Sequence record: NC_006883.2
Direction: 5' to 3' (one strand)
DNA: 64,000 bases
This document shows, piece by piece, positions 8,872 to 28,592 of the stretch (positions are counted from its first letter, which is position 1; the number at the start of each line of letters is the position of its first letter). Both the position numbers and the translations under genes were made by a program. Below the pieces are notes generated by a model. The model made no database searches and was not told the DNA's origin. It saw only the letters and a program-made list of their open reading frames with translations.

Positions 8872-8896
8872 CTTTCACTATATAAGCGTATATAAT
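8868..8896 (+). promoter_or_regulatory. Sigma70 promoter TTGACT-N17-TATAAT
   Basis: Near consensus, upstream of ORF 8919. Confidence 0.75.
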
Positions 8897-8918
8897 ATAT
8901 GAGTAATTACATAACATT

Positions 8919-9674: not shown

Positions 9675-9816
9675 TATCTTTGAGGGTGATAAACTTCTTT
9701 ATGAAGATCTCACCCAAGATGAGTACTTTAGTGCTATGGAGGACCTTGCATATGAATTTTATGACAATGGTTCTCACAATCCAAACGATTTAAGAACTGA
9801 AATTAGAGCAATTTAA
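9652..9816 (+). CDS. Hypothetical protein, about 54 aa
   Basis: ORF track 9598..9816; likely start at 9652. Confidence 0.6.
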   Translation: MKNKELYSIFEGDKLLYEDLTQDEYFSAMEDLAYEFYDNGSHNPNDLRTEIRAI

Positions 9817-9818
9817 CT

Positions 9819-9962
9819 ATGGCAACTCGAACTGGTATCAACGGTAACGTATTTGTAGAGGCAATCCCGAAAAAGTCTCGTCAAGGAAACGGCAAACATA
9901 CAAAATACTCCGCTACGTCTCGTAATAAGGCGAAAAAGAGAAATAGAGGGCAAGGTAAGTAA
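9819..9962 (+). CDS. Small very basic protein, 47 aa (...PKKSRQGNGKHTKYSATSRNKAKKRNRGQGK)
   Basis: Read manually; resembles the small gene usually near gp25 in cyanomyoviruses. Confidence 0.75.
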   Translation: MATRTGINGNVFVEAIPKKSRQGNGKHTKYSATSRNKAKKRNRGQGK

Positions 9963-10597: not shown

Positions 10598-10616
10598 AGT
10601 ATATTTAAAAAATAGG

Positions 10617-10624
10617 TATAAATA
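10617..10624 (+). promoter_or_regulatory. T4 late promoter TATAAATA
   Basis: Exact consensus 30 nt upstream of gp25. Confidence 0.85.
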
Positions 10625-10654
10625 AAGAGAGATAATACTAAATATACCATTTAG

Positions 10655-11056
10655 ATGGCAGTCCAACGCACATCACAATCATTTAAAGATATAAGTCTAT
10701 CTTTCAAACCACATCCAGTGACGAAAGATCTTCCAATCTTGAAGAATGAACGTGCAATAGTGCGGTCTGTTAGAAATTTAGTAGAAACAATTCCCACAGA
10801 AAGGTTCTTTAACTCAAATTTAGGAACTGATATACGTGCAAGTCTCTTTGAGAACTTCTATCCAACCTTAACTAAGGTAATAGAGGATCAAATTAATGAA
10901 ACTGTCATGATATATGAACCTAGAGTTCAGAATTTAAGAGCACAAGTAGACGATTACATTGATTCAAACGCTTTTAATGTAACAATAATCTTTGATATTA
11001 GAGGTTTACCTGTTCCTACACAACAATTTTCCTTTCTTTTAGAACCTACAAGATAG
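10655..11056 (+). CDS. gp25: Baseplate wedge subunit gp25
   Basis: DISLSF..HP.T.D, ERFFNS.LG, YEPRV motifs; synteny. Confidence 0.92.
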   Translation: MAVQRTSQSFKDISLSFKPHPVTKDLPILKNERAIVRSVRNLVETIPTERFFNSNLGTDIRASLFENFYPTLTKVIEDQINETVMIYEPRVQNLRAQVDDYIDSNAFNVTIIFDIRGLPVPTQQFSFLLEPTR

Positions 11057-11060
11057 TAAT

Positions 11061-13004: not shown

Positions 13005-16000
13005 ATGAGCATAGGCATCGATAAAAGAGTTCAGGTCAATAGAATAGTTGAAAGTCAGTTACCTGAATTTGTAAGGTCGGATTTTCCTCTCGCTGTTGAT
13101 TTTTTAAAGCAATATTATATTTCACAGGAATTTCAGGGTGGTACAACTGATTTAATTGATAATTTAGATCAGTATCTAAAGGTTGATAATCTAATTCCTG
13201 AAGTTGTTTATGGAACTACTACATTATCTTCTGATGTTTCTATATCCGATGCAACTATCACTGTTGCATCAACTAAAGGTTTTCCTGATACCTATGGTCT
13301 TTTAAAGGTTGGTAGTGAAATTATAACATATACTACCAAAACAGATACTACTTTTAATGGTTGTCTTCGTGGTTTTAGTGGAATAAGTGGATTTGAAGTT
13401 GGAATATCAACATCTTTAGATAATGTCAATAGAGAAGGTTTAATATTTGAGAGTACAAAGGCAGAATCTCATGTTAATGGTGCAACTGTCACCAACTTAA
13501 GTGTATTATTCATACAACAATTTTATAAAAAGTTAAAGAAAACATTCTTACCTGGTTTAGAAGATAACGATTTTACTAGAGATCTTGATGTTGGTAATTT
13601 CATAAAGCATGCTAGATCTTTTTATCAGTCAAAAGGTATTGAAGAATCCATTAGAATCCTATTAAAGGTTCTATTTGGAGAAGAATCTATAATATTAGAC
13701 TTAGAGGAGCGTTTATTTAAACCTTCTAGTGCAGAATTTATAAGAAGAGAAGTTATAATTGCCGATAGGATTGTTGGAGATCCTCAAAAACTAGTTGGTC
13801 AAACTATTTTTAAATCAAATGATTTAGGAACAAGTGCTTCTGTATCTGAAGTTGAGATATTAACTAGGAATGAAAAGATCTATTATAAGATCTCTTTATT
13901 TGTTGGATACTCTGATAGAGATTTAATTGAAGGAATATTTACTATTCCTGGTAGGACAAAGGTAATGGAACCAGTTTCAGTTGGTTCTTCCATTGTTTCT
14001 GTAGATTCTACTGTTGGATTTGCTCAGACTGGTTATGTTTTATGTGGTATTAACTCAATTACATATTCATCAAAATCAGTTAACCAGTTCTTTGGTTGTA
14101 CTAATATATCAGAAAACATTGGTATTGGTTCTGATCTTAGAGCAGATGAAACAATTTTTGGATATGAAGATGGGGATTTAGAAAAAAGAGTTGATTTAAG
14201 AATAACTGGTGTTCTATCTGAATTTAAAACAGTATCAGATATCTCTTCGGTATCTGAAGGTGAGAGGATTTTTGTTAAGAACGTTGGTGAAACTATACTT
14301 AATCCAAGTAGTGGCAAGACCTATAAAGAAGTATTTGCAAATTCTTGGATATACAATACTAGCAGTAGATATCAAATTTCTAATATTTCTGGTTCTACTA
14401 TAGTATTGGGAAGTTCAATTGATAAATCTAGTTTAAAAGTTGGCGATAAAGCAGAAATTTTAAGTAGAAACTCTGAAAATGTTGAAGTTTCACTTGTTGA
14501 AATTACAAATATCGATGCTGCTGGTAATGCAGTAATAGTTTCTGGAATATCTGGATTTACTCCTGCGGTTGGTTTATATTATGATTTAAGAAGAAAACTG
14601 AATAAAGCATCTAGTCAAGGTATAGAAATAGCAGAAGGTAACTCGAATATTATATCTGATGTATTAAATGTTTATACTGATGATGATAAGGATGGATATG
14701 TTGCATCTAACTCCTTACCGAGTTATACGTTACCTTCATCAATTAAAAGAACTTTACTTCAAATAACATCTACAACTGATAAGTTAGAAGGATATAATAA
14801 TTTAACTAAGGATTATAATATAATTTTATCTGGCAATAATGATGAAATTGAGTTAATTACTGGAGATGCTGTAGTTTATGAATCCTCCAATTCGTTAGTT
14901 AACTTAGAATCTGGCACAACTTACTATGTTGAAATAGTTCAGAAGAAACCTGGTAAAATTAGACTATATCGTTCCAGAGGAATGATAGGTAATGTAGTAA
15001 ATGCTATCAGATTTGCTGCTGAAGGACTTGCAACAACTTCTACTCATACGTTTACAAAAGAAACTGAGTATGTTAAGAATTTATCTGCTAATAAAATTCT
15101 TAAGAAATTCCCATTAAGTCAAGATCTATATGTTTCTGGTAAAAATGAAACACCAGTTAACAATATTGGTATGTTGATTGATGGTGTTCAAATAAGAACT
15201 CCTATATCAGAAGATTGCATTTATTATGGTCCTGTTGATACTGTAGATGTATACAATGATGGTGAAGGTTATGATGTAGTAAATCCACCAAGATTGATTA
15301 TTGATAATAGTATTGGTGCAGGAGTAACTGCATTAATCGAACCCGTTATTAGTGGAACAGTTAAAGAAGTATTTGTAGATCCTCATGATTTTGATATAGA
15401 TGAAGTAAAAGCAATTTCTTTAACAGGTGGTAATGGATCTGGTTGTCTTTTAGAACCTGTTATCGGACAAAGATATAGAGAAATGCTCTTTGATAGTAGA
15501 GATATTTTCTTCTCTGGTGGACTATCAATAGAAGACGAAACAATTACATTTAAGAAGAAGCATTTCCTATCTAATGGTGAGGTTATTTACTATAATAGTA
15601 ATGGTAATCCTGCTATTGGTATAGGTGGATATGGTGATACATCAAATACTGCTAGTGGAAGATTAGCAACTGGTGCTGGATATAATGTTAGGGTAATTAA
15701 TACAAGCACTATTCAGTTGCATAAGACTTATGAGGATGCGATTGCAGGTATTAATACTATCGGTATTTCAACTGCAACTAACGCTGCAGGTATTCATAAG
15801 TTTAGAACAGTATCTAAGAAAACCTTACAATCGGTTAAAGTTCTAAATTCTGGTTCTGGTTATCAATATAGAAAATTACATATCAAACCAACAGACGTTT
15901 CTGTAGGATATGCAAAGATAAACTTTAAGGGTCATGGATTCTCTGATGGTGATCTTGTTGAATATACAACTTCAGGAACTGTTATTAGTGGATTAAACAC

Positions 16001-19000
16001 ATCCAATAATTATCATATACTTAAAGTTGATGATAATTCGTTCAGATTAGCAGATGCAGGTATCGGAACCCCATCTAGAGGCACTTATGAGAGACGTGAT
16101 TATGTTGGATTAGAATCTCAAGGTGAAGGATTCCAGACATTTAAGTATCCAGATATTAAAGTAACTGCAGAAGTTTCTTTTGGATCTACTGTTACTGGAT
16201 CATTTAATTTTACTCCAGTAGTTACAGGAAACATAGTTGATACTTATCTCTATGAAAAGGGTAGTAAGTATGGTTCAACTATATTAAATTTACAGAAAAA
16301 TCCAAAAATAGTTGTTGAGAATGGAAAAGATGCTATTGTACGTGGTTCTATAGTTGGTGGTAAGGTAGTTGATGTTCAAGTTTTAAATAGAGGATCTCAA
16401 TACTACTCTTTACCAGAAGTTTCTATAGAAGCAGTTGGAATGACCACAACTGGAGTTACTGGTGCTGGAGTTTATGGAACTGGTGCTATTCTCAAACCAA
16501 CAATTAGTGAAGGAAGATTAACTGCTGTAGATGTAATTAATCCTGGTATTGGATATACTGATTCTTTAGTTACATTTAGCGTTAAGGCAAGAGGAAAGAA
16601 TGCTAAGTTTGAACCGAGAGTTAGAAAACTAATAATTGATAATAATAAGAGGCAGGGAAATTATAGTTTAAATTCTGAAGGTGGAAATACTTTAAATCTC
16701 GCTGTTCATGGATATTCATCAGAAATTAGAACATCATTTAAAGATGATGGAACTAGTCACTCTCCTATTATTGGTTGGGCGTATGATGGAAATCCAATTT
16801 ACGGACCATATGGATATACTAAAACTGATGAATTAGGACCTGCTGTTGGTATTGTAACTTCTGGTTATGTTTTAGATTCTACTAAAGTTTTAGATCGTCC
16901 ATCTTTAAGTGAATTTGAGGCAGGATATTTTACAGATGATTGGCAATATACAGGAGCACATACTCTTGATGAACATAATGGTAGATTCTGTAAAACCGAT
17001 GAGTTTCCTAATGGTGTCTATGCGTATTTTGCTAGTGTAGCACCTAGTACACAAACAAATGATTTAGAACCAAGTTTCCCATACTTTATTGGTAAAACTT
17101 ATAGATCTCCTTACATATCATCTAATACTACATTAACACAAGAATTTGATTTTAACACTTCAAATCTAGCAAGAAATACTTTCCCATACAAAGTTGGTAA
17201 TGCTCTAGCTGATAATGATTTTATTGTAGAATCTAATGAATTTTTAAGACAATTAACTACTGTTGAGTCTGTAACTACTGGTGAAATCGATAGTTTACAG
17301 GTTTTAGATGGTGGTTCTGGATATAGGGTTGGCGACTTTACAGATTTCAATGATGATGGAACTAATGGATCAGGTCTTAGAGGACAAGTTAAATCTTTAG
17401 TTGGTATTGCAGTTTCTAGTATTACAACCGATTTGACTAGATATGAAAATGCAGTATTTACTTGGAAATCTGGCACTGAAGTTATTGCAAAATATTCACC
17501 ATTCTTCGAGATTGGTGATAAGGATTCAGTTTCAATATCAGGATTAACTAGTTCAATAGTTCACTTAACAAATTCATTTACTGTTGGTGTTTCAACCGAT
17601 AAGATTGGACTTGCTCAATCTATGACTGCAAATGCAGTTGTTACTGGTAGAGTTGATGATATTTACGTAAATATAATTCCAAAATCAGTTTCAATTGGTT
17701 CATCTATAAAAATCAATGATGATGAGACTGTTAGGGTTCTTAATATCTATGATGTAGGTTCTATTTTAAGAGTAAAGAGGTTTGGTACTGGTGCTGCTCA
17801 TGCCTACGGATCTAAATTAGATGTTTTAAACAGAGAAATATCAATACCAGTTAAGGTTGAAAAGTTTGAATCCACAAATAACGATCTAGTTTACTTTAAT
17901 CCTCATCAAGCAGTAGGTCTTGGTACGACAGTTGGTGGTGGTATTAGTCTTGATTATACTGTTGGTGAAACTACAAAAGAAGTTCCTATACCAACAAGAT
18001 CAATATATCTTCCAAATCACCCATTTGTTAATGGACAGAAGTTAACATTTACTAAGAGAGGAACTGCTACATCTTTGATTGTTGGAGAAGAGAGTGCTCC
18101 AAATAACCTATTCAATATTCCAAATGTAACAACAGATACTTTTACTGTATATGCTATCAATAAGGGGCAAAATTATATTGGTCTCGTAACTGAAAGAACT
18201 TCAATAGGTAGTACAAGTGAAGGTTTATTCTTCCACGGTAATGGATCTGATGACTTTGAATATGCTTTAGAATCTAATCACAATCAAGTTATTGGTGATG
18301 TTGATAGTATTACTGCAACAGTTCTTACGAATATTGGGTTAGCAAGAACTAGTACACATGGTTTAAACAACGGTGATACCATTAATTTGAATGTTATACC
18401 AAATTCTGTTGTTGGCGTAGGTAGTACTGCACCATTAAGTCTTATTTTCAATTCTGACTTCCAGAAGTTAATGGTTAATAGGGTTGGATTTAATTCATCA
18501 GGTATTAATACAACAACATCTACTATAACATTAAACAGTCATGGTTATAAAACTGGTGATAGAATTTTATATGAAGCTACTGAATCTGCGGATGGTTTAG
18601 ATAATCCATGTTATTATGTTTATGAGCAAAACTCAAATCAATTTAGTTTAGGTGAAACTTTAAGTGATGTTCAACAGCAACCACCATTATTGGTTGGTAT
18701 CACTTCTGTTGGTGGAGAAATTCATACTGTTGGTTTAGTTAATCCTCAATTAAGAGTAACTAAGAATTCTAAATTATCTTTTAATATTTCTGATCCTTCT
18801 TTAACTGGATATGATCTTAAATTCTTCTATGATAAAGAATTTAAAAATGAATTTGTTAGTTCTCAAGATAGTGATAGATTTAATAGATCTGGTGTAGGTA
18901 CGGTTGGTATTGGATCAACTTCAGCTGTATCACTTGCATTCTCTAAGACAACCCCAACCCAGTTATATTATGGAATAGAAAAGGGTGGGTATATTAGTAC

Positions 19001-22000
19001 TGCTGATCCATTAGTTCCAAATTATTCTGAAATTAAGTTTGTAGATAGTGTTTATAGTGGTGAGTATAAAGTATTTGGAATAACATCAGATACTTTTAAG
19101 GTTTCTCCTACAAAAATACCCGAACTTCTCTCTTATCAAGCAGATCAGTGTGAAATATTAGAATATTCAACAGAATCTAAGACTGTAACTGGATCAATAA
19201 AAGATATAAAGGTAATCTCTAAAGGTGTTGATTATAAGAAAATTCCTAAATTTGAACAAATTCTTAGTGCAAGGGGTTCAAATTGGAGTAATATAATTGA
19301 TTATAAGCGTGGTACTGTAGTTGAATTTGGTGGATTAACTTATGTCGCAATTACAACTAGCACCAATGTTGTTCCAACAACACCAGAAAACTGGGAGAGA
19401 GTTATTACTAGTGGTAAAAATGCGAATGTGGTGGCACTTTCTACTTCAATTGCAAGGATTAATGATGTAAGAATTCTTGATATTGGTTATGAGTATCCAT
19501 CAGATAAAACTTTAAGTCCAGAAGCATTTGTTTCTCCAGTAATTAGGATTGATAATGTAGATAGTATTAAGGGTATTAATGTTGTTGATGGTGGTAATCA
19601 ATACTTATCTGCTCCAGATGTTATTGTTTATGACCCTGAAGATGATAAAGTTGTAGATGAAACTTCTTTAATTGCTAAAACTCCACATCAATCAATATCC
19701 GAAATTGATATCATTGCACCTATTCAAGGATTACAATCAGTAACTCATAGAATTGTTACGGTTAATAACTCGAATGGTGTAGGAATTTCTTCTATGACTG
19801 GTGGTGGAAGTGGAATAGTTACTTGTATTCTAGAGACTCCAATAAACGGATTTGTAAATCCTCCATTTGAAACTGGAGATGAGATTTTTGTAGAAGGTGT
19901 TGAGTTATTTGGTGAAGCTGGTATAGGAACTCAAACCAATACCAATTCTTCTGGTATTGCTACTGGTGGAGATGGTTATAATTCTTCAAATTATCAATAT
20001 AGATTCTTTAAAGTTGATGATTATGTCAACTCAAATCCAGCAGTTTTGAAATATAGTATAGCTGGATTAACAACTAATCCTGGTATTGCTAAAACCTATC
20101 AATCAGGTTATGCAAATATTATTAATAGGAAGAATTATCCTGTATTTGATGTAGTTCAGGAAAGAGGATTATTATTACTCAATGAAAGTATTCTTGTTCA
20201 ATCAGGAACTAGCTTTATTGAAAGAGGACTTACTGTAGTAGAATCTAGAGAAGATTACATTAAAATTGATGGTGATTATCAATTACAGATAGATGATAGA
20301 ATACAGGGTGCTAATAGTAATGTTAGTGCAACAATAACTGGTATTGTTGGAAATAGAGCTAAATTTAAAGTTGATTATGCTAATAGAAAAGATTATGGAT
20401 GGTTAGACAATACTGGAAAATTAAATGAAGATTTCCAAGTTATTCCAGATAACGATTATTATCAGAATTTATCATACTCCATTAAGAGTCCAGTTCCTTG
20501 GGATAATTTAGTTAATCCTGTTAATAGACTGGTTCACCCATCAGGACTTAAAAATTTCTCTGATGTTGGTATAACATCTGCGGTTACTGTTGGTATTGGA
20601 ACAACAATTCAGGCAACTCCAGTTATAGTTGTCGATCTTATGAATGATAAGAGAGTTGATACAATTAATAACTTTGACTTTGGAAGAGATTATGATGCTA
20701 GACCTGAAGTAAATCCAACAAAATCAAAATTTGCAACATTCCAGAATACTAAATTAACAGATTATACAAAATGTAAGTCAAATAGAGTTCTAATTCATGA
20801 TGATATTAGTGGAAGATTCTCAAGTAAAGGTTTCCAAGATGTATTTACTGAAATTGAAGAAATTGATGGTAACTTTACAAAATATTTGGTGCAAATTGTT
20901 AATGCAGATACTCTTGATGTTCAATTATCAGAGATAGCAGTACTAACAACTACAAATAACGCATTTTTAGTTGAAAAATCATCAGACTATACAAATATAA
21001 AGTTGGGTGATTTTGAAGCAACTGCAGATGCATTCCAAAGAAAGGCATTAAACTTCTTACCAACTGACAAGTATGACAGAGATCATGATATCAAAATCTT
21101 AAAAACTGAATTTGTTACTAATGCAATTAAAAATGAGTCAACTTCAATAGGACAAATTGATTTAACTGGTGTTAATGTAAAAGTTGCTATTGCACAGACA
21201 GATGCTAGTGATAATATTATTGGAGTTACTACAACAACTATAGCACAATTCTCCGATACAGATTTCAATGGATTCTTTGCTGATGTTCTAGTTCAGGATG
21301 ATATCACTAAAGAACTTAACTATGGTGAAGTTATAGTAGACTTTGATGGAACCAATATCTTTTATGCAGAGACTTATGTTGATGCATTAAATGTTTCTTA
21401 TAGTGCATCTAGAGTTGGAGTTCTTACTGCAAGATATGACTCTGGTACAATCTACTTTGAATGTGAAAATGATACGAAGAGAGTAATTAATGCAAGTGCA
21501 AATGTTGTTGGTTTAGGTGCAACACTATCAGTTGGAGTGGGAACATACAGATATGCTGTTCCTGGTCAACCTATTGGTGCTGAGAGAAGTGCTAGATTAG
21601 AATCAACTTATCATACAGGTACTTCAACACCAATATTAATCTCTACAATCGATAAGAGAATTGATAGTTCAATTAAGACTCTAGTAAGAGTTTCTAGTTC
21701 TACTGAATCTGCTATACATCAAGCAGTTACTTTACAAGATGATGGTGTTGCAACTACTATACAGTACCCATTCACAGGACAATCTAATTCTGGATTAGGT
21801 ACAATTGGAGCAGTTACATCAGGAAATAATATTAATATTAATTTCTATCCAGATGCATCACAAACATCTCTAATTGAAGTTCAGGCATATAATGAAGTTT
21901 TCAATACAATAAACGATTTCTCCAATACTCCAGATTCTTTGGTTGTTGGTCCTGCAGAGAAGAGTATATTATTATCTTCTTACGATGGAGTAAATGGAAG

Positions 22001-25000
22001 TAGAGCAAATAAAGTTAATTTTGAATTAGAGCATAATGATATTCCAATCTACTCTAAAGTATTCAATCCTGCAGATACAACTCAATTAGATAAAGTAACT
22101 GGTGAATTTACCATACCAGATCATTTCTTTAATGATAATGAACAGTTAACATATACTCCTGGATCTACTTTTGTTGGAGTAGGATCAACTGCAGTATCAA
22201 TAGGATCTACAACTAATAGTGCTGGTATTACAACTGATATACTACCATCCACAGTATTCGTTAAAGTTGTTAATGAAAATAAATTCAAACTATTCAGTAG
22301 AGAAGAATATGTTTCATCTGGTATTGCAATAACATTCACTGGAATTGGTGAAGGTAATGCACACAAACTTGATATGACTAAGAAACTATCTAAGACTGTT
22401 ATTGGTTTAGATGGTATTGTTCAACAACCAATTACATTTACTTCAATTGAACATACACTTAACGGTGCTATTGGTGCTGCAACATCTCAATTTGTTCTTA
22501 GTGGTATTAGCTCAGTTCAACCAAGAGATGTATTGAAGATTGAAAATGAATATATGAAGGTTGAGCAAGTAGGATTTGCAAGTATTTCTGATGGAACTAT
22601 CAATGATTCTGCTGATGTTGCCCTCGGTATTTGTACTCTACCAGTGGTTAGGGTTAATAGAGGATCTTTGGGTATAGCAGCAACTTCTCACGCTGACACA
22701 ACCGCTACTAGGGTTCATAGAGGATCCTTCAATATAGTTGATAGTACTGTATGGTTCTTAGACCCACCAAAGGGAAATACTAGAGCAAGAAGAAATGATA
22801 CTAACTTACCATATGTAAGAGCAGAATTTAGTGGTAGAACCTTCTTAAGAAGTAATTACGATACTAATATGGTGTTTGATGATGTTTCAGATTCATTCAC
22901 AGGAATCGGCAAAACTTATACTTTAACTGTTGGTGGTGCTAATACTGAAACTGGTGTTGCTGTTGGAAATGGCATTTTATTCATCAATGGTGTGTTCCAA
23001 ACTCCACTTACATTGAATAATGCTGGTAATAATTATGAGATGAAGGCAGATACTACTGCTGGTATTTCTAGTGTTATATTCACTGGTATATCTTCGGAAA
23101 ATGGCACTCCAATGCAATCCGACTTTGATATTAACCAGAATCAATTGCCAAGAGGTGGTCTAATAGTTTCAATGGGATCTACTCCAGGTATTGGATATGC
23201 TCCACTTGTGGGTGCTAAAGTTAAACCAAGTTTAACAGATAATACTAACTTATTTGCTGCTGGATCTATCAATCAAATTACTGGAATTGGTGTATCATCT
23301 AAGTATCAACTTGGTATTCAAACTGCTGCTTATGATAATACTACTGGAATAATAACAGTTACAACCAGTTCTGTTCACGGATATGCTTTACAATATCCAA
23401 TTTCAGTTCATCTTAAAAATTTAGAGTTTAGATGCCCAACTGGAGTTGTTGGAACTCCTACTAATGCTACAACATATGATCCAGCAACGGGTGATATGGT
23501 AGTAACAATTCCAAATCACGGTCTTTATGATGGTGATGCAATTAAATTTGATAAGGAATCAATAACCTTTAGTTGTAATTATAATGGTGCTACAGGTTCT
23601 GCTGCAGAGAAAGCATATCCTCGTGCTACAGATCCTGCTTATGACAAGTACCTATACATCTCTGACGTAACGACAGATACATTTAAGGTAAATGTACTAT
23701 TAGGAACAACTCCAACCAATACAGATGCACACACGTTCGTTTCAGCAACGCCTAATGCAGTAAAAACTATTGGTGATGGTGGATATGTTGGTGTTACAAC
23801 TTCATTCTTCCAAGATCATGAAAGAGGTTTACCTATAGTTGGTATTATATCTGAGAGAACATTTGAAGTTCAAGCTGGTTTAACCACAATTAGACATAAT
23901 TATCATGGTGGTGGAAGTGTATATGAGTACTATAATGATTTAACTTTCGGATCTGGTTATCGTGATCCAGTTTCTATTGGAGCAACTGATATAGCATTTG
24001 TACATAAATTTGTTTCTTCAAATACAAATTCAATAACAGATAATACAGGAACGCAATATACACCTTCTATTGTAGATTATATTTCTTCTACAGGAGAATT
24101 AATATTAACTCTCGGAGATAATCATGGATTAACTTCTCCATCTACACACGATATTAATGGTGTATCTTATAATCCAACATCTGGCGTAATGACAATTACT
24201 GCAGGTGTATTAACTAATGGTCATGGATTCTCGAATAATGATTGGATTAAGATTAAAGATCATTCAATTACACTTACATGTACAATGGATAATAATGGTA
24301 GTAACCATACTTATCCTAGACCTTCTGATCCAATAAGCGATAAGTGGGTACAAATTACAAATGCAACTCAATTTACCTTTGACGTGAATGTTGGTGCTTC
24401 ACCAGAAGTAACATTTACACCAACTTTTGCTGAGTATGATCCTACAACAGGATTGATGGAAATAACGATTGGTGCTCATACATTAAGACCAGGAACTAGT
24501 ATTAAACTTGATCAAGAATCAATCAAATTCACTTGTGATCTTGATGATAATAATGCTGAGAAGGCATATCCTAGAACAACTGATCCTTTCTTTGACACAG
24601 CAATTAATATTGAGTCTGTTACTGATACAACTATCACAATTCAAACTCTAACAACAATACCATCAACAAACATTTCTAGACACACCTTTAGTAGTGCAAA
24701 TCCTAATGCAGTAAAAACTGGTGGTAATTACACACATACATTTGTTCCTGGATTAGATGCAGCGAAGGATGCAATTAAGAGATCAACGAATACCGTTACT
24801 ATTGCAACAGAATCTTTGAATTTTACTTGTTCTAGAGATAAGCATAACAGTGTACATCCATATCCACGTTCTACTGATCCTGCTGCAGGTCAAACATTAG
24901 GATTGGATGGAGTTACAAATAATACTATTACTGTTAATGTTGGATCTGGTGGTGGTGGAGGAACTGGTGCGTTATTCTCTGCTAAGGTTGCAACAAATAA

Positions 25001-28000
25001 GCATAAGTTTGTAAACTCTATTGGTACTCATAATTTTAAAGGAACTAAGAAGTGGGATGCTATTACTGTTGGTACTACAAAGAGATCTGTTTCTGATGCT
25101 GCATATAATCCATTAACAGGTGTATTAGAATTAACTATTGGATCTACTACTGGATTATCTGCTGCCACTTCACATCAGGCAGAATCAGGCACTAGTTATA
25201 ATCCAACTACAGGTATTATGACCTTGAAGGTTACTGGTCATAACTTCTCTAATGGCGACTATGTAAGACTTGATGATGGTGCAGTTACCTTTAAGTGTGA
25301 TTATGGTGTAGGTTCAGCACATACATGGGTTGGTGGAACATCAACTAACGCTGTTACAATTACTGCTGGTAATGTTCAGAAAAATGTAACAAATGCAGTA
25401 TATGATCCTAATACTGGTCTTTGTGTAATGACTATTGGATCACATAGTTTTACGACTAGTGATACAGTTACAATTGGTGCTAATAAGTTATCCTTTACTT
25501 GTACTGCTGACGGTAACGTCAAGACTAAGACATATCCACGTACAACTGATCCTGCATATAATACTGCTATTGCAATAACTGCTGTGGATCAATCTGGTGG
25601 TACTATTACCTGTAATGTTGGTGCTGTAAGTGGTAATGAAACAACTGCATATCCTCGTGTTAGTGATCCTATTAGTAATAAGTGGGTTGCAATTTCTAAT
25701 GTTCAGACAGATACATTTGATATTCAGGTATTAGATACAATTCCTTCTACTAATACAGATACGCATACATTTGTAAGCGGAGCAGCAGGTGCTATTAAGA
25801 GAGCATTAGATACTTTAACAATAGAACCTAAATCACTTATCTTTACTTGTGACGCTGATAATCATGCAACATTACATGCTTATCCAAGAACTTCTGATCC
25901 TGCATATAATTCACCATTAGGAATTACTGCTGTAACAGGAACCACAGTAACTGTAAATGTTGGTGCTCCACATCAACAAGATGGTGTTTCTGTTTCATAT
26001 GGATCTACAACAGCAAGTAATGCAACTTACGATCCTTCAACTGGAGAGTTGATTGTTATTAGTAATAATCATGGTATTCCTGGTGCATCTCTCACAACAC
26101 CTACAAATGCTTCTTATGTTAAGAATACTGGAAATCTAACTCTTACTAAAGCGAATCATGGATATTCTGTTGGTGATAAAATTCTAATTGAAGATTATGG
26201 TTTAACATTCACTTGTACAAAGGATAATAATCAAACAGAACACAGATATCCAAGACCAACTGATTATGCAAGTGGAAGATGGCTTTCGATTTATGCAGTA
26301 ACAACTAACACATTTAAAGTTAATGTAAATCCAAGTCCATCATTATCTCAATTTACTCATACATTTGTACCTGGTAAAACCGTAACCAACTGTATTCAGA
26401 AATCAAATGCTAAGATTGGTATTGTAAAAGGATCTTTAGTATTCAAGTGTGCTCAAGATGCTTATCAAACAGTTCATCCATATCCTAGAGTAACTGATCC
26501 AGCATATAATACAGATTTACCAGTTGGTAGAGTGACAATAAACACTATGAGATTACAAGTAGGCAAATCTCCTGCTGGTACTGGTGGTTCTTTAGACTTT
26601 ACTATTACTAATCAAGGTGCAAGATACGTTAATCCTGAAGTTTCAACACCAGAACCAGTTTACGAAAATATGCCTATTGTTGGTGTTTCTAGATTGGGTG
26701 TTGGTAAGACAGAAGATACTGGTAGAAATTTACTATTAAATCTTAATGTAGGTGCGGCAACAACTAATGTTGGAGTTGCTAGAAGTATGTTTGAGATTTC
26801 TGAATTTGATGTTGCTAGATCTGGTTATTCGTTCGCTATTGGTGATAAGTTCAAACCAATTGGATTAGTAACTGATAAGAGATTGCAAAAACCTTTACAA
26901 GAATTCCAGCTAGAAGTTGTTTCAACATTTAATGATTTCTTCTCTGCTTGGCAGTTTGGTGAATTAGATTTCATAGATGATATTTCACCTATGCAAACTG
27001 GAACCAGAAAGAGATTCCCACTATTCCGAAATGGACAATTATTAAGTTTTGAAATTGATGAAGAATCTCTACTAGGAGAGCAAATTGATTTAAATGCAGT
27101 TCTAGTAATATTTGTAAATGGTGTTATGCAGACTCCTAATGTTGCATATCAGTTTGAGGGTGGAACTACGTTTACCTTTACAGAAGCACCATCAGTAGAA
27201 GATAAAGTTGATGTATTCTTCTACAAAGGACAAGATGGTATTGATGTTGAGATAGTTAATATCAATGAAACTATCAAAATTGGTGATGATATTCGTATTA
27301 CTAGAAATCCAGCATTTACAGATACTATAGATCAAGAAAATGATAGAATTATCAAAGATATTCTAGGTTCTGATCTTGTTGAAACAACATTATACCGAGG
27401 AAAAGGTATTAATGAAACAACATTTAAACCTGTTGATTGGACAAAACAGAAAGAAGATAAGATTATTAAGGGTGAATTAATTTCTAAAGCAAGAGAAATT
27501 ATTGAACCACAAATATATCCAACAGCAAAGGTTATTGGAGATGTATCTACTTCTTCTGGTACAGGTGCTAGTGGTGGAATATTTGTTGATGATGCAGAAT
27601 CATTCTTCTATGAAGATGATACCAACCCTGCATTAGGAACTGATGATAGGTATAATGTTAACATCACGGCAGTAGATGCATTATTAATGTCATCTGACAA
27701 TTCTGTAGCAGCAGCGATTACTGCAACTGTTTCTGCTAAAGGTGATATATCAGCATTAACTATTGTTGAATCTGGTAGTGGTTATGTTGGTTCTGCAGTT
27801 ACATTATCAATATCAGCACCAATAGGAGTTGGTATTGGAACAACTGTTAAGAATGAATATGCACAGGTTGGAGTTTCTACATTCGCAGAAGCAACTGCTA
27901 ACATCGTAAATGGTAAAGTTGATTCTATAACAATAGACAATATTGGATTAGGATATACTCATACAAATCCACCACAAGTAATTATTAAGAGACCTCTATA

Positions 28001-28592
28001 TCAAACTGAGAAGATGACCTCATTTGATAATGTTGAAGGTTACACTGGTATTATTACTGGAATTTCTACTGCACAAGGTTCTGGTGGAGCAGGAACTAAA
28101 GCACTTAAGTTCTTCTTTACTTCACATAAATCAAATGCTAATAAGTTGGCAGTTGGATATCCTTTATTAATAAAAGATACCACAATAGGAAGTGGAGTTA
28201 CTTCTGTTGATGGAAATGATAATAGTGTAGTTGCTATTGGAACACATTTCTTAGATAACATCTATAAAGTTCATACATTCTCACAACTTAGTGACTTTAG
28301 AGCAGAAATTACCTGCGATATTTTAAGCACAACTAATACTACTGGTTTTGCTCAAACTGGTTACTATGATATAACCAATATTGGATTGACAACCTCGTTA
28401 GGAACTATATCTTGGGGTAGAATATATAATGGAACTAGATCAACTTCACCAATTTCAATAGGCGTTACTGGATTGACAGTTGATTCTGGATTATCAACAT
28501 ACCCAACAATACAAAGAAGGTATTATGGTGGTTTAAATTCTGAATTTGGACTACGAAATACAGGTTCCATTAGGATTGTTAGTGGACTATAA
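13005..28592 (+). CDS. gp7: Giant baseplate wedge initiator (gp7-like), 5195 aa
   Basis: Between gp6 and gp8; FYQSKG.EESI..L N-terminal motif and HPSGLKNF; many beta-rich inserts. Confidence 0.85.
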   Translation: MSIGIDKRVQVNRIVESQLPEFVRSDFPLAVDFLKQYYISQEFQGGTTDLIDNLDQYLKVDNLIPEVVYGTTTLSSDVSISDATITVASTKGFPDTYGLLKVGSEIITYTTKTDTTFNGCLRGFSGISGFEVGISTSLDNVNREGLIFESTKAESHVNGATVTNLSVLFIQQFYKKLKKTFLPGLEDNDFTRDLDVGNFIKHARSFYQSKGIEESIRILLKVLFGEESIILDLEERLFKPSSAEFIRREVIIADRIVGDPQKLVGQTIFKSNDLGTSASVSEVEILTRNEKIYYKISLFVGYSDRDLIEGIFTIPGRTKVMEPVSVGSSIVSVDSTVGFAQTGYVLCGINSITYSSKSVNQFFGCTNISENIGIGSDLRADETIFGYEDGDLEKRVDLRITGVLSEFKTVSDISSVSEGERIFVKNVGETILNPSSGKTYKEVFANSWIYNTSSRYQISNISGSTIVLGSSIDKSSLKVGDKAEILSRNSENVEVSLVEITNIDAAGNAVIVSGISGFTPAVGLYYDLRRKLNKASSQGIEIAEGNSNIISDVLNVYTDDDKDGYVASNSLPSYTLPSSIKRTLLQITSTTDKLEGYNNLTKDYNIILSGNNDEIELITGDAVVYESSNSLVNLESGTTYYVEIVQKKPGKIRLYRSRGMIGNVVNAIRFAAEGLATTSTHTFTKETEYVKNLSANKILKKFPLSQDLYVSGKNETPVNNIGMLIDGVQIRTPISEDCIYYGPVDTVDVYNDGEGYDVVNPPRLIIDNSIGAGVTALIEPVISGTVKEVFVDPHDFDIDEVKAISLTGGNGSGCLLEPVIGQRYREMLFDSRDIFFSGGLSIEDETITFKKKHFLSNGEVIYYNSNGNPAIGIGGYGDTSNTASGRLATGAGYNVRVINTSTIQLHKTYEDAIAGINTIGISTATNAAGIHKFRTVSKKTLQSVKVLNSGSGYQYRKLHIKPTDVSVGYAKINFKGHGFSDGDLVEYTTSGTVISGLNTSNNYHILKVDDNSFRLADAGIGTPSRGTYERRDYVGLESQGEGFQTFKYPDIKVTAEVSFGSTVTGSFNFTPVVTGNIVDTYLYEKGSKYGSTILNLQKNPKIVVENGKDAIVRGSIVGGKVVDVQVLNRGSQYYSLPEVSIEAVGMTTTGVTGAGVYGTGAILKPTISEGRLTAVDVINPGIGYTDSLVTFSVKARGKNAKFEPRVRKLIIDNNKRQGNYSLNSEGGNTLNLAVHGYSSEIRTSFKDDGTSHSPIIGWAYDGNPIYGPYGYTKTDELGPAVGIVTSGYVLDSTKVLDRPSLSEFEAGYFTDDWQYTGAHTLDEHNGRFCKTDEFPNGVYAYFASVAPSTQTNDLEPSFPYFIGKTYRSPYISSNTTLTQEFDFNTSNLARNTFPYKVGNALADNDFIVESNEFLRQLTTVESVTTGEIDSLQVLDGGSGYRVGDFTDFNDDGTNGSGLRGQVKSLVGIAVSSITTDLTRYENAVFTWKSGTEVIAKYSPFFEIGDKDSVSISGLTSSIVHLTNSFTVGVSTDKIGLAQSMTANAVVTGRVDDIYVNIIPKSVSIGSSIKINDDETVRVLNIYDVGSILRVKRFGTGAAHAYGSKLDVLNREISIPVKVEKFESTNNDLVYFNPHQAVGLGTTVGGGISLDYTVGETTKEVPIPTRSIYLPNHPFVNGQKLTFTKRGTATSLIVGEESAPNNLFNIPNVTTDTFTVYAINKGQNYIGLVTERTSIGSTSEGLFFHGNGSDDFEYALESNHNQVIGDVDSITATVLTNIGLARTSTHGLNNGDTINLNVIPNSVVGVGSTAPLSLIFNSDFQKLMVNRVGFNSSGINTTTSTITLNSHGYKTGDRILYEATESADGLDNPCYYVYEQNSNQFSLGETLSDVQQQPPLLVGITSVGGEIHTVGLVNPQLRVTKNSKLSFNISDPSLTGYDLKFFYDKEFKNEFVSSQDSDRFNRSGVGTVGIGSTSAVSLAFSKTTPTQLYYGIEKGGYISTADPLVPNYSEIKFVDSVYSGEYKVFGITSDTFKVSPTKIPELLSYQADQCEILEYSTESKTVTGSIKDIKVISKGVDYKKIPKFEQILSARGSNWSNIIDYKRGTVVEFGGLTYVAITTSTNVVPTTPENWERVITSGKNANVVALSTSIARINDVRILDIGYEYPSDKTLSPEAFVSPVIRIDNVDSIKGINVVDGGNQYLSAPDVIVYDPEDDKVVDETSLIAKTPHQSISEIDIIAPIQGLQSVTHRIVTVNNSNGVGISSMTGGGSGIVTCILETPINGFVNPPFETGDEIFVEGVELFGEAGIGTQTNTNSSGIATGGDGYNSSNYQYRFFKVDDYVNSNPAVLKYSIAGLTTNPGIAKTYQSGYANIINRKNYPVFDVVQERGLLLLNESILVQSGTSFIERGLTVVESREDYIKIDGDYQLQIDDRIQGANSNVSATITGIVGNRAKFKVDYANRKDYGWLDNTGKLNEDFQVIPDNDYYQNLSYSIKSPVPWDNLVNPVNRLVHPSGLKNFSDVGITSAVTVGIGTTIQATPVIVVDLMNDKRVDTINNFDFGRDYDARPEVNPTKSKFATFQNTKLTDYTKCKSNRVLIHDDISGRFSSKGFQDVFTEIEEIDGNFTKYLVQIVNADTLDVQLSEIAVLTTTNNAFLVEKSSDYTNIKLGDFEATADAFQRKALNFLPTDKYDRDHDIKILKTEFVTNAIKNESTSIGQIDLTGVNVKVAIAQTDASDNIIGVTTTTIAQFSDTDFNGFFADVLVQDDITKELNYGEVIVDFDGTNIFYAETYVDALNVSYSASRVGVLTARYDSGTIYFECENDTKRVINASANVVGLGATLSVGVGTYRYAVPGQPIGAERSARLESTYHTGTSTPILISTIDKRIDSSIKTLVRVSSSTESAIHQAVTLQDDGVATTIQYPFTGQSNSGLGTIGAVTSGNNININFYPDASQTSLIEVQAYNEVFNTINDFSNTPDSLVVGPAEKSILLSSYDGVNGSRANKVNFELEHNDIPIYSKVFNPADTTQLDKVTGEFTIPDHFFNDNEQLTYTPGSTFVGVGSTAVSIGSTTNSAGITTDILPSTVFVKVVNENKFKLFSREEYVSSGIAITFTGIGEGNAHKLDMTKKLSKTVIGLDGIVQQPITFTSIEHTLNGAIGAATSQFVLSGISSVQPRDVLKIENEYMKVEQVGFASISDGTINDSADVALGICTLPVVRVNRGSLGIAATSHADTTATRVHRGSFNIVDSTVWFLDPPKGNTRARRNDTNLPYVRAEFSGRTFLRSNYDTNMVFDDVSDSFTGIGKTYTLTVGGANTETGVAVGNGILFINGVFQTPLTLNNAGNNYEMKADTTAGISSVIFTGISSENGTPMQSDFDINQNQLPRGGLIVSMGSTPGIGYAPLVGAKVKPSLTDNTNLFAAGSINQITGIGVSSKYQLGIQTAAYDNTTGIITVTTSSVHGYALQYPISVHLKNLEFRCPTGVVGTPTNATTYDPATGDMVVTIPNHGLYDGDAIKFDKESITFSCNYNGATGSAAEKAYPRATDPAYDKYLYISDVTTDTFKVNVLLGTTPTNTDAHTFVSATPNAVKTIGDGGYVGVTTSFFQDHERGLPIVGIISERTFEVQAGLTTIRHNYHGGGSVYEYYNDLTFGSGYRDPVSIGATDIAFVHKFVSSNTNSITDNTGTQYTPSIVDYISSTGELILTLGDNHGLTSPSTHDINGVSYNPTSGVMTITAGVLTNGHGFSNNDWIKIKDHSITLTCTMDNNGSNHTYPRPSDPISDKWVQITNATQFTFDVNVGASPEVTFTPTFAEYDPTTGLMEITIGAHTLRPGTSIKLDQESIKFTCDLDDNNAEKAYPRTTDPFFDTAINIESVTDTTITIQTLTTIPSTNISRHTFSSANPNAVKTGGNYTHTFVPGLDAAKDAIKRSTNTVTIATESLNFTCSRDKHNSVHPYPRSTDPAAGQTLGLDGVTNNTITVNVGSGGGGGTGALFSAKVATNKHKFVNSIGTHNFKGTKKWDAITVGTTKRSVSDAAYNPLTGVLELTIGSTTGLSAATSHQAESGTSYNPTTGIMTLKVTGHNFSNGDYVRLDDGAVTFKCDYGVGSAHTWVGGTSTNAVTITAGNVQKNVTNAVYDPNTGLCVMTIGSHSFTTSDTVTIGANKLSFTCTADGNVKTKTYPRTTDPAYNTAIAITAVDQSGGTITCNVGAVSGNETTAYPRVSDPISNKWVAISNVQTDTFDIQVLDTIPSTNTDTHTFVSGAAGAIKRALDTLTIEPKSLIFTCDADNHATLHAYPRTSDPAYNSPLGITAVTGTTVTVNVGAPHQQDGVSVSYGSTTASNATYDPSTGELIVISNNHGIPGASLTTPTNASYVKNTGNLTLTKANHGYSVGDKILIEDYGLTFTCTKDNNQTEHRYPRPTDYASGRWLSIYAVTTNTFKVNVNPSPSLSQFTHTFVPGKTVTNCIQKSNAKIGIVKGSLVFKCAQDAYQTVHPYPRVTDPAYNTDLPVGRVTINTMRLQVGKSPAGTGGSLDFTITNQGARYVNPEVSTPEPVYENMPIVGVSRLGVGKTEDTGRNLLLNLNVGAATTNVGVARSMFEISEFDVARSGYSFAIGDKFKPIGLVTDKRLQKPLQEFQLEVVSTFNDFFSAWQFGELDFIDDISPMQTGTRKRFPLFRNGQLLSFEIDEESLLGEQIDLNAVLVIFVNGVMQTPNVAYQFEGGTTFTFTEAPSVEDKVDVFFYKGQDGIDVEIVNINETIKIGDDIRITRNPAFTDTIDQENDRIIKDILGSDLVETTLYRGKGINETTFKPVDWTKQKEDKIIKGELISKAREIIEPQIYPTAKVIGDVSTSSGTGASGGIFVDDAESFFYEDDTNPALGTDDRYNVNITAVDALLMSSDNSVAAAITATVSAKGDISALTIVESGSGYVGSAVTLSISAPIGVGIGTTVKNEYAQVGVSTFAEATANIVNGKVDSITIDNIGLGYTHTNPPQVIIKRPLYQTEKMTSFDNVEGYTGIITGISTAQGSGGAGTKALKFFFTSHKSNANKLAVGYPLLIKDTTIGSGVTSVDGNDNSVVAIGTHFLDNIYKVHTFSQLSDFRAEITCDILSTTNTTGFAQTGYYDITNIGLTTSLGTISWGRIYNGTRSTSPISIGVTGLTVDSGLSTYPTIQRRYYGGLNSEFGLRNTGSIRIVSGL
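23331..26565 (+). repeat. Ten degenerate ~90-aa modules in gp7 (Y[DN]PxTG...H...FTC...YPRxxDP...VNVG...HTFV), several nested
   Basis: 10 YxxxTG starts and 9 YPR motifs, all in frame. Confidence 0.85.

What the first reader, a model, noticed from the sequence alone, without database searches (positions are those of the whole stretch)
23331..26565. Russian-doll nested domain repeats inside the 5195-aa gp7
Seen: module starts (YxxxTG) at 23331, 23475, 24078, 24168, 24435, 25104, 25197, 25401, 26028 and 26115; YPR motifs at 23616, 24312, 24567, 24861, 25533, 25650, 25881, 26247 and 26481. The order is not tandem. The module starting YNPLTG (25104) breaks after 'HG/TG-L' and resumes at 'DTLTIEPKSLIFTC...YPR' (25881). 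Inside it, module 25197 breaks after FKC and resumes at YPR 25650, and inside that sits complete module 25401. Similar nesting occurs at 24078[24168[24435]], 26028[26115] and 23331[23475]. Inference: copies inserted repeatedly into surface loops of the same fold, giving a branched adhesin-like arm on the baseplate.
Basis: partly seen in the sequence, partly recalled or inferred. Interest (0 to 1): 0.72.

Follow-up and report, generated by a model that had tools for sequence, protein, structure and literature searches.

The report
Nested beta-barrel modules in cyanophage gp7
A 1,080-residue stretch of the giant baseplate protein of Prochlorococcus phage P-SSM2 holds ten copies of one small beta-barrel module, and about half are interrupted by further copies sitting inside their loops, up to three deep; this recursive architecture is common in marine cyanophages, and I found no published description of it.

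Summary
All ten YxxxTG starts and nine YPR motifs lie at the stated coordinates, and only in residues 3443-4522 of the 5195-aa gp7 of Prochlorococcus phage P-SSM2.

A profile of the contiguous copies hits the broken copies as pieces with complementary profile ranges (1-17 with 20-75; 1-38 with 46-95), in last-in-first-out order.

Comparison with relatives is the strongest evidence:
- A genome 97% identical in the flanks (AG-345-E02) lacks exactly the 215-codon inner cassette (window 25145-25808) and has a contiguous module 6.
- Another relative carries an extra module inside module 2.
- In 268 relatives, 355 of 1689 parsed modules are split, at two main loops. A-only pieces (300) balance BC pieces (310), and AB pieces (197) balance C pieces (185). 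Nesting reaches four levels.

AlphaFold2 models the unit a9[m10]b9c9 as a rigid body (pLDDT 91.8, pTM 0.85). Independent BFVD models of other cyanophage proteins superpose on it (TM about 0.8). The fold resembles the endosialidase and E1-FCCH beta-barrels, but Pfam thresholds are not met.

No coordinates were returned, so contact between split halves is inferred. The adhesin role is untested. Within the phage-record collection, the module occurs only in cyanophage records.

The parts
13005..28592 (+). gp7-like giant baseplate wedge protein, 5195 aa (P-SSM2 orf113)
   Evidence: phrog_2885 'baseplate wedge subunit' covers the whole length. It lies between a gp6-like ORF (phrog_219) and a gp8-like ORF (phrog_438).
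23331..26570 (+). Module region: ten copies of the roughly 75-100-aa module, aa 3443-4522
23331..23441 (+). Module 1, N-part (elements a+b, HMM 1-36); the chain leaves after F-x-C
23475..23774 (+). Module 2, complete and contiguous (a b c d), sitting inside module 1
   Evidence: P0002 carries an extra module of about 100 aa inside this one, after F-x-C.
23805..23915 (+). Tentative degenerate closing half (c', d') of module 1; the YPR motif is lost
   Evidence: Read from the sequence. The HMM does not detect it, and pLDDT is low there. Uncertain.
24078..24134 (+). Module 3, N-part (hairpin a only, HMM 1-18)
   Evidence: Y and G are invariant in 28 orthologues. pLDDT is 86-90.
24168..24407 (+). 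Module 4 (a b c, HMM 1-78), inside module 3; its d element is probably at 24735-24782
24435..24728 (+). Module 5, complete (a b c d), inside module 3 and probably inside module 4 between its c and d
   Evidence: Two consecutive D tokens follow it.
24786..24950 (+). Module 3, C-part (b c, HMM 20-74); its d element is at 25002-25025
25104..25160 (+). Module 6, N-part (hairpin a, HMM 1-14/16)
   Evidence: It is joined directly to b6 in P0004, P0007, P0010 and AG-345-E02.
25145..25808 (+). Cassette present in P-SSM2 but replaced by 19 nt in AG-345-E02 (97% identical flanks). It holds the end of hairpin a6, modules 7 and 8 and their linkers.
25197..25310 (+). Module 7, N-part (a+b, HMM 1-38); the chain leaves after F-K-C
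   Evidence: An unsplit counterpart occurs in 22 proteins at 55% identity or more.
25401..25643 (+). Module 8, complete a b c, the innermost level. A d-like strand precedes it at 25320-25355.
25647..25802 (+). Module 7, C-part (c d)
25809..25973 (+). Module 6, C-part (b c, HMM 21-75)
26028..26084 (+). Module 9, N-part (hairpin a, HMM 1-17)
   Evidence: Y, P, G and H are invariant in 28 orthologues. pLDDT is 91-93.
26115..26402 (+). Module 10, complete (a b c d), inside module 9
26406..26570 (+). Module 9, C-part (b c, HMM 18-75)

Best explanation
Residues 3443-4522 of P-SSM2 gp7 are built from ten copies of one small all-beta module. The module has these elements in order:
- a: a hairpin carrying Y-x-P-x-T-G and H-G
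- b: two strands ending in F-T-C
- c: Y-P-R-x-x-D-P plus two strands
- d: an optional closing H-T-F strand

Its fold is most like the closed beta-barrel found inserted in phage endosialidases and in ubiquitin E1 (the FCCH domain).

The module has three permissive loops: a|b, b|c and c|d. In five or six of the ten copies the chain leaves the barrel at one of these loops, builds one or two further complete barrels, and returns to finish the first. The layout is:
- 1[2]
- 3[4[5]], or 3[4 5]
- 6[7[8]]
- 9[10]

Each nested unit is a compact, rigid multi-barrel body, because every inner barrel is tied to its host by two chain crossings. The units are strung together by flexible linkers.

Shown: the motif layout, the complementary halves, the presence or absence of nested cassettes between near-identical phages, and the confident rigid model.

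Inferred:
- The halves of each split copy pack into one barrel.
- Cassettes are gained, lost and exchanged by in-frame recombination between diverged copies.
- The array forms a variable, outward-facing part of the baseplate that displays many lectin-like barrels for binding the cyanobacterial surface.

I put the architecture at about 0.85 and the surface-binding role at about 0.35. The confidence figure below is for the architecture.
For: - Motifs are at the exact coordinates and nowhere else in the protein or the window.
- Partial HMM hits have complementary ranges and nested order.
- Across relatives of 2500 aa or more: A-only 300 against BC 310, AB 197 against C 185. Stack-grammar violations are 318 against 658 +/- 24 when the pieces are shuffled.
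- 355 of 1689 parsed modules are split. Insert lengths are quantised: median 116 aa, upper quartile about 216 aa.
- Module 6 is contiguous in P0004, P0007 and P0010, with about 85% identical flanks.
- Module 6 is also contiguous in AG-345-E02, whose DNA is 97% identical on both sides of an in-frame 215-codon difference at window 25145-25808.
- P0002 has an extra d-a-b-c insert after F-x-C of module 2 that five relatives lack.
- 22 of 339 split modules have an unsplit counterpart with both halves at 70% identity or more.
- The signature residues of the lone hairpins are invariant in 28 orthologues.
- AlphaFold2 of aa 4335-4530 (a9[m10]b9c9): pLDDT 91.8, pTM 0.85, hairpin a9 at pLDDT 91-93. Split and contiguous copies have the same strand order.
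- BFVD models of S-SSM7 gp7 and other cyanophage proteins superpose on the whole unit: TM 0.79-0.84, rmsd 1.9-3.1 A, at 32-44% identity.
- The best Foldseek PDB hits are the endosialidases of phi92, K1F and NF (probability 0.95-1.0), then Uba1.
- A covariation score learnt on contiguous copies prefers the true partner half in 170 of 266 comparisons. This is weak evidence.
Against: - The tools return no coordinates or PAE, so contact between a split hairpin and its b-c half was never seen directly. pTM 0.85 and matching strand order are indirect evidence.
- Closure of module 1 is degenerate and poorly modelled.
- Nesting of module 5 inside module 4, rather than beside it, is not settled.
- The relatives are phylogenetically related, so the family-wide counts are not independent events. 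At 80% identity or more, only 3 split modules have unsplit counterparts.
- The fold assignment is weak: Foldseek E about 4e-3 and TM about 0.29 over 196 aa. Pfam End_beta_barrel scores 15.5 bits against a cut-off of 35, and E1_FCCH scores 12.7 against 29.5.
- No evidence bears on binding or on position in the virion.
Confidence: 0.85

Rival explanations
1. The architecture is as described, but the array is only a structural spacer or strut. Nested barrels would give a stiff, proteolysis-resistant extension that sets baseplate geometry, with no ligand binding by the modules.
For: - No binding evidence exists.
- The near-invariant residues (Y1, G6, H15, C34, YPR45-47, D50, H83) could be purely structural or hold a structural metal.
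- FCCH-type barrels occur as passive external decoration on siphophage tail tubes (PMC13576161).
- The rigid-body prediction fits a strut.
Against: - The region is the most variable part of an otherwise well-conserved protein. phrog_2885 gives it only about 200 profile positions, against 1080 aa here.
- It differs by whole cassettes between 97%-identical phages. That pattern is typical of host-interaction parts.
- The same module sits in proteins annotated as tail fibres.
- The closest solved fold is the endosialidase beta-barrel domain. That this domain binds sialic acid is from my own knowledge, not tested here.
Confidence: 0.35
2. The lone hairpins and half-modules do not close on their partner in the same chain. 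Instead they pair in trans with halves from neighbouring gp7 copies or other baseplate proteins, giving strand-swapped assembly.
For: - Contacts could not be inspected.
- T4 gp7 is present in several copies per baseplate (established knowledge of the T4 baseplate).
- Complementary halves could in principle complement in trans.
Against: - The monomer model of a9[m10]b9c9 is confident and rigid without any partner (pTM 0.85), and is reproduced in BFVD monomer models.
- Piece counts balance within each chain and in last-in-first-out order.
- Contiguous orthologues show that the two halves form one module in cis.
Confidence: 0.06
3. The region is an ordinary tandem array in which some copies are truncated or decayed. 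On this reading the lone hairpins and half-modules are independent remnants or linkers, not halves of one domain.
For: - The lone hairpins score poorly on their own (E 0.03-4.6).
- The closing half of module 1 is degenerate.
- DNA-level repeats are short and diverged, as expected of old, decaying repeats.
Against: - Truncation points are complementary and cluster at two loops.
- A-only against BC, and AB against C, counts balance.
- Signature residues of the fragments are invariant among orthologues.
- The fragments are modelled with high confidence and the same strand pattern.
- Contiguous orthologues join exactly the two fragments.
Confidence: 0.04

Closest known systems
Beta-barrel domain of phage endosialidases (Pfam PF12195 End_beta_barrel; PDB 4hiz, 1v0e, 3gvk, 3ju4)
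   Same: - These are the best Foldseek PDB matches for the nested unit (probability 0.95-1.0).
- Module 2 gives a weak Pfam hit over the hairpin and H-G...G-D part (E 0.017).
- That barrel is itself an inserted domain in a phage host-recognition protein (from my own knowledge, not tested here).
   Different: - The score is far below the Pfam cut-off (15.5 against 35 bits). TM is only about 0.29 over 196 aa.
- No sequence or profile hit to any PDB chain.
- The cyanophage module has its own near-invariant signature (C34, YPR45-47, D50, H83).
- It is inserted into copies of itself, not into a propeller.
E1 FCCH domain (Pfam PF16190), including FCCH-like decoration domains on siphophage tail tubes (PMC13576161)
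   Same: - It is a small closed beta-barrel.
- Uba1 chains appear among the Foldseek hits.
- PF16190 is a precomputed hit in several giant homologues.
- It is known as an external domain on phage tails.
   Different: - In P-SSM2 the Pfam score is 12.7 bits against a cut-off of 29.5.
- No nesting is described for the FCCH domains.
Domain insertion giving discontinuous domains in general, for example carbohydrate-binding modules inserted in siphophage Dit/Tal proteins, or nested domains in Gram-positive pilus adhesins (from my own knowledge, not tested here)
   Same: A guest domain sits in a loop of a host domain, and the host domain is discontinuous in sequence. Such insertions are common in phage host-recognition parts.
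   Different: - Here guest and host are the same module.
- The nesting is recursive: 3 levels in P-SSM2, 4 in relatives.
- It affects about a fifth of roughly 1700 parsed copies.
- Nested cassettes behave as exchangeable units.
T4 gp7 baseplate wedge protein (PDB 9f4a; Pfam PF23786)
   Same: - The gene sits between gp6-like and gp8-like genes.
- It is annotated gp7.
- phrog_2885 'baseplate wedge subunit' matches along the whole length.
   Different: - It is five times longer than T4 gp7.
- Direct similarity to T4 gp7 is marginal: E 0.093 over about 100 residues, and Pfam 18.3 against 27 bits.
- No similarity of the module region to T4 gp7, or to any other solved chain, was found.

Membership tests
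Discontinuous (nested) domain insertion | The N-part and C-part of a split copy together cover one module profile without overlap | tested here: met
   HMM ranges are 1-18 with 20-74, 1-14 with 21-75, 1-38 with about 46-95, and 1-17 with 18-75.
Discontinuous (nested) domain insertion | A relative exists in which the same module is contiguous, that is, without the insert | tested here: met
   Module 6 is contiguous in P0004, P0007 and P0010 and in AG-345-E02, which has 97% identical flanks. Module 2 carries an extra insert in P0002 only.
Discontinuous (nested) domain insertion | The split halves contact each other and form one domain in three dimensions | tested here: inconclusive
   The AlphaFold2 nested unit has pLDDT 91.8 and pTM 0.85, with hairpin pLDDT 91-93 and the same strand order as contiguous copies. 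BFVD models superpose at TM about 0.8. No coordinates or PAE were available to read contacts.
Tandem repeat array | Copies follow head to tail, each complete before the next starts | tested here: not met
   The token string of gp7 is not (ABC)n. Five or six of the ten copies are interrupted.
Pfam PF12195 End_beta_barrel | Score at or above the gathering threshold (35 bits) | tested here: not met
   The best score is 15.5 bits, E 0.017, for module 2 only. The fold-level match to endosialidases is weak.
Pfam PF16190 E1_FCCH | Score at or above the gathering threshold (29.5 bits) | tested here: not met
   The score is 12.7 bits, E 0.14. Some homologues carry a precomputed PF16190 hit.
T4-type baseplate wedge protein gp7 | Sequence match to gp7 family models | tested here: inconclusive
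   phrog_2885 'baseplate wedge subunit' matches every segment scanned outside the module region at E 0 to 4e-219. Pfam PF23786 scores 18.3 against 27 bits, and T4 gp7 chain 9f4a gives E 0.093.
T4-type baseplate wedge protein gp7 | Position between gp6 and gp8 homologues | tested here: met
   The upstream ORF matches phrog_219 and the downstream ORF matches phrog_438, both 'baseplate wedge subunit'.
T4-type baseplate wedge protein gp7 | Presence in the virion baseplate | not testable with these tools
   I found no proteomic or structural data for P-SSM2 gp7. Sullivan et al. 2005 (PMC1079782) only infer it.

The most novel reading that the evidence does not exclude
Recursive self-insertion of one beta-barrel module is a general building principle of the giant virion proteins of marine T4-like cyanophages. 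Rigid, tree-like clusters of barrels would be assembled from nested cassettes. These cassettes would be swapped in frame between near-identical phages as a way of varying the host-contact surface. The near-invariant His-Cys-His, YPR and Asp residues would form a conserved metal or ligand site in every barrel.
Probability: 0.3. Interest if true: 0.8.

Novelty: new variant of a known kind. Interest (0 to 1): 0.66.

Why it matters
Domain insertion is well known. A single module repeatedly inserted into copies of itself is not something I could find described. Here it goes three levels deep in P-SSM2 and four in relatives, and it affects about one copy in five across hundreds of giant proteins.

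- It gives a natural series of 'same barrel, with and without a guest' pairs, some in 97%-identical genomes. Such pairs are rare material for studying how discontinuous domains fold and which loops tolerate guests.
- It explains part of why cyanophage baseplate and fibre proteins are so large and variable.
- It defines a cyanophage-restricted module (290 of 50,697 phage records, all cyanophages) that no Pfam family matched above its threshold.
- It warns that repeat finders and domain callers that assume tandem order will mis-segment these proteins.

Tried and rejected
- **Foldseek of the whole 1081-aa model against the PDB**: only meaningless multi-domain matches, TM below 0.1. I replaced it with the 196-aa unit.
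- **Sequence and profile searches of the PDB**: no significant hit, so no solved relative.
- **Reading contacts of split halves directly:** not possible. Structure prediction returns no coordinates or PAE, and no model file appears in /data.
- **Naive stack depth**: this gave depths up to 7. I rejected it as an artefact of unclosed A tokens and replaced it with the height of fully closed modules, maximum 4.
- **DNA-level repeats**: only short 18-53-nt matches at conserved motifs, 60-92% identical. The copies are old, and there is no sign of recent duplication within P-SSM2.
- **Unsplit-counterpart count at 55% identity** (206 of 339): too permissive given paralogue similarity. I give the count at 70% or more (22) and at 80% or more (3) instead.
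- **Covariation partner test**: only weak support (64% wins), and confounded by shared ancestry.
- **Literature searches**: no description of this module or its nesting. The library is partial.
- **Outer modules:** I did not splice inner modules out of outer ones. Halves were always compared apart.
- **Consensus lines:** one search printed, column by column, the commonest residue and its share for the well-conserved columns. Searches printed consensus lines of the tools' own making.
This report has the same content.


Full report
**What the window is.** The window is 100% identical to Prochlorococcus phage P-SSM2 (AY939844.2 / NC_006883.2). There the 5195-aa ORF at 13005..28592 is annotated gp7, baseplate wedge initiator. 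It lies between a gp6-like ORF (phrog_219) and a gp8-like ORF (phrog_438). phrog_2885 'baseplate wedge subunit' matches every part of it, very strongly outside the module region (E 0 to 4e-219) and only partly within it. Direct similarity to T4 gp7 is marginal: Pfam PF23786 scores 18.3 bits against a cut-off of 27, and PDB chain 9f4a gives E 0.093. Sullivan et al. 2005 (PMC1079782) noted only that this gene of more than 15 kb looks like a fibre fused to a gp7 homologue.

**Checking the observation.**
- All lie within aa 3443-4520. Chance would give 0.25 YPR and 2.1 YxxxTG in the whole protein.
- There is one extra chance YxxxTG at 23580.
- A profile HMM built from contiguous copies as they stand finds the module nowhere else in the 64 kb, on either strand.

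**Anatomy of the module.** I split the module into four elements:
- a: a hairpin with Y-x-P-x-T-G and H-G
- b: two strands ending in F-T-C
- c: Y-P-R-x-x-D-P plus two strands ending in V-N-V-G
- d: an H-T-F-V-S strand

In 537 distinct contiguous copies from 120 giant homologues, Y1, G6, H15, C34, Y45, P46, R47, D50 and H83 are 97-100% conserved.

**Split copies in gp7.** The HMM hits the broken copies as pieces with complementary profile ranges:

| Residues | HMM range | Reading |
|---|---|---|
| 3443-3479 | 1-36 | module 1, N-part |
| 3491-3590 | full | module 2 |
| 3692-3710 | 1-18 | module 3, N-part |
| 3722-3801 | 1-78 | module 4 |
| 3811-3908 | full | module 5 |
| 3928-3982 | 20-74 | module 3, C-part |
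| 4034-4047 | 1-14 | module 6, N-part |
| 4065-4102 | 1-38 | module 7, N-part |
| 4133-4213 | 1-81 | module 8 |
| 4215-4266 | c and d | module 7, C-part |
| 4269-4323 | 21-75 | module 6, C-part |
| 4342-4358 | 1-17 | module 9, N-part |
| 4371-4466 | full | module 10 |
| 4466-4522 | 18-75 | module 9, C-part |

There are ten a, ten b and ten c elements, one c being degenerate, and their order is that of balanced brackets. The layout is 1[2], 3[4[5]] or 3[4 5], 6[7[8]], 9[10].

Two points stay uncertain:
- The closing half of module 1 has lost YPR and is poorly modelled.
- Module 5 may sit inside module 4 or beside it. Two consecutive d elements after it favour nesting.

**Natural experiments.** This is the strongest evidence.
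- In P0004, P0007 and P0010 (about 60-66% identical overall, about 85% in the flanks), the orthologue of module 6 is contiguous. Hairpin a6 runs straight into b6c6. P-SSM2, P0002 and P0003 carry about 217 residues between them.
- At DNA level, the single-virus genome AG-345-E02 is 97% identical to window 22000-25144 and to 25809-28000. It has 19 nt where P-SSM2 has 664 nt (25145-25808). This is an in-frame difference of 215 codons that removes exactly modules 7 and 8 and leaves a whole module 6.
- Conversely, P0002 has an extra insert of about 100 aa after F-x-C of module 2, made of a d-like strand plus a complete a-b-c copy. P-SSM2 and four other relatives lack it.
- Among 28 orthologues, module 6 is absent in 15, contiguous in 10 and split in 3.

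**Family-wide grammar.** I made separate HMMs for a, b, c and d and used reversed sequences to set thresholds.
- The 268 fetched relatives give nearly equal numbers of A, B and C tokens.
- In 127 proteins of 2500 aa or more, the pieces are ABC 1097, A-only 300, BC 310, AB 197 and C 185.
- A bracket parser finds 318 violations, against 658 +/- 24 when the pieces are shuffled.
- Of 1689 parsed modules, 355 are split: 236 at the a|b loop, 135 at the b|c loop, and 16 of these at both.
- Insert lengths are quantised at about one module (median 116 aa) and two modules (about 216 aa).
- Counting only fully closed modules, 329 hold one level, 45 hold two levels and 12 hold three. That makes four levels of barrels, as in P0012 aa 3201-3599.
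- Runs of four ABC are followed by three D tokens in 33 cases, which fits closure at the c|d loop.
- Unsplit counterparts with both halves at 70% identity or more exist for 22 of 339 split modules. The looser 55% figure of 206 is inflated by paralogue similarity.
- These counts are not independent events, because the proteins are related.

**How the nesting arose.**
- Outer modules 3, 6 and 9 resemble each other. So do the first inner modules 4, 7 and 10. Module 8 is closest to module 6.
- The triple cassette A[AB[ABC]CD]BC recurs in 32 other proteins.
- Nested cassettes are therefore old units that are duplicated and exchanged whole. Each level need not be a new insertion in P-SSM2.
- DNA repeats inside the region are short and diverged.
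- Inserts at the b|c loop begin with a d-like strand. This is what a copy taken out of register from a tandem array (d-a-b-c) would give. It requires the module's two ends to be adjacent. This is inference.

**Structure.**
- AlphaFold2 on aa 3440-4520, with 28 aligned orthologues, gives mean pLDDT 76 and pTM 0.34: an all-beta chain of domains on flexible links. The lone hairpins are confidently modelled (a3 86-90, a6 73-82, a9 70-78). Split copies show the same strand pattern as contiguous ones.
- AlphaFold2 on aa 4335-4530 (a9[m10]b9c9) gives pLDDT 91.8 and pTM 0.85, with a9 at 91-93. This is a rigid two-barrel body.
- BFVD models of S-SSM7 gp7 and other cyanophage proteins superpose on the whole unit at TM 0.79-0.84 and rmsd 1.9-3.1 A, with 32-44% identity.
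- The tools return no coordinates or PAE. Packing of a9 against b9c9 is therefore inferred, not seen.
- A covariation score learnt on contiguous copies prefers the true partner half in 170 of 266 comparisons. This is weak support and is confounded by ancestry.

**Fold and family.**
- The best PDB matches of the 196-aa unit are the endosialidases of phi92, K1F and NF (probability 0.95-1.0, E 4e-3 to 0.1, TM about 0.29). Next come Uba1, riboflavin synthase and other small closed barrels.
- Pfam gives only sub-threshold hits: End_beta_barrel 15.5 against 35 bits, and E1_FCCH 12.7 against 29.5 bits.
- Sequence and profile searches of the PDB find nothing.
- The module therefore works like an FCCH or endosialidase-type barrel, but it is not shown to be a member of either Pfam family.
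- FCCH barrels are known as external decoration on siphophage tails (PMC13576161).

**Distribution.**
- A word-index search found 470 or more giant homologues of 3-8 thousand residues.
- 556 clusters at 50% identity match, among 1.84 billion representatives.
- 290 of 50,697 phage records match, and every one is a cyanophage (Synechococcus 211, Cyanophage 49, Prochlorococcus 22, marine single-virus genomes 8). The matching genes are annotated as structural protein, tail fibre, short tail fibre or gp7.
- P0028, with 23 contiguous copies, lies next to gp13/gp15 neck genes of a T4-like contig.

**Function.**
- Shown: this is the most variable part of a conserved baseplate-gene product. It differs by whole cassettes between near-identical phages.
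- Inferred: it is exposed and displays many lectin-like barrels that contact the cell surface. I put this at about 0.35.
- The main rival is a passive stiff strut, also at about 0.35.

**Verdict.** The nesting interpretation is supported, short of direct contact evidence. The adhesin-arm idea is untested. I found no description of the module or its recursive nesting in the searched literature. I rate it a new variant of a known kind (domain insertion), with interest about 0.66.

- Halves of split modules were always compared apart, and no insert was excised.
- One search printed per-column top residues with shares. Alignment tools printed their own consensus lines.
- None of these was used, and no majority sequence was built.

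Noticed in passing
window 16707-17045 (gp7 aa about 1235-1347): A YHYH domain (Pfam PF14240, E 4.7e-25, above the cut-off) sits inside the giant gp7. Most gp7-type homologues share it.
   Followed up: no
gp7 module columns H15, C34, H83 (also H43, D50, YPR45-47), e.g. window 26157, 26214, 26358 in module 10: One Cys and two His are 97-100% conserved in 537 copies, together with YPR and Asp. This looks like a metal or ligand site in every barrel. It could not be checked without coordinates.
   Followed up: partly
window 18102-18578 (gp7 aa 1700-1858) and other upstream stretches with H-G-F/Y-x-x-G-D: There are weak partial hits of the module's hairpin and H-G...G-D part far upstream (E 0.003-1). 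The same hairpin-barrel motif may occur in more diverged form elsewhere in gp7.
   Followed up: no
L001 (MH319731.1, Marine virus AG-345-E02) 3315-3333 against window 25145-25808: The six-residue loop of the contiguous module 6 in AG-345-E02 closely resembles the same loop of P-SSM2 module 8, in DNA as well as protein. This hints that the difference arose by recombination between diverged copies and not by a simple insertion.
   Followed up: partly
L002 (JGI Ga0073579_1191224) 6001-20295, protein P0028: This 4764-aa protein lies next to gp13/gp15 neck genes. It is built of a four-module super-repeat, (ABC)x4 followed by 3-4 d strands, repeated at least five times. In one of the four module types the YPR motif reads L-P-S.
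   Followed up: partly
window 9962-10597: A 2OG-Fe(II) oxygenase-like ORF (phrog_61, E 2.8e-43) lies just upstream of the baseplate wedge genes.
   Followed up: no
window 30243-37763: A second giant ORF (2506 aa; phrog_358, function unknown) directly follows the gp8-like gene. It holds no copy of the module.
   Followed up: no
HQ632825.1 (Prochlorococcus phage P-SSM5) 1-1998 and 250463-251050: The P-SSM5 record is 100% identical over this region, but its numbering starts inside gp7, so the gene is split across the record ends and annotated 'hypothetical protein'.
   Followed up: no
window 35801-36280 (-) and 45106-45723 (-): Two minus-strand ORFs of 159 and 205 aa lie inside or overlap long plus-strand ORFs. 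They are probably not genes.
   Followed up: no
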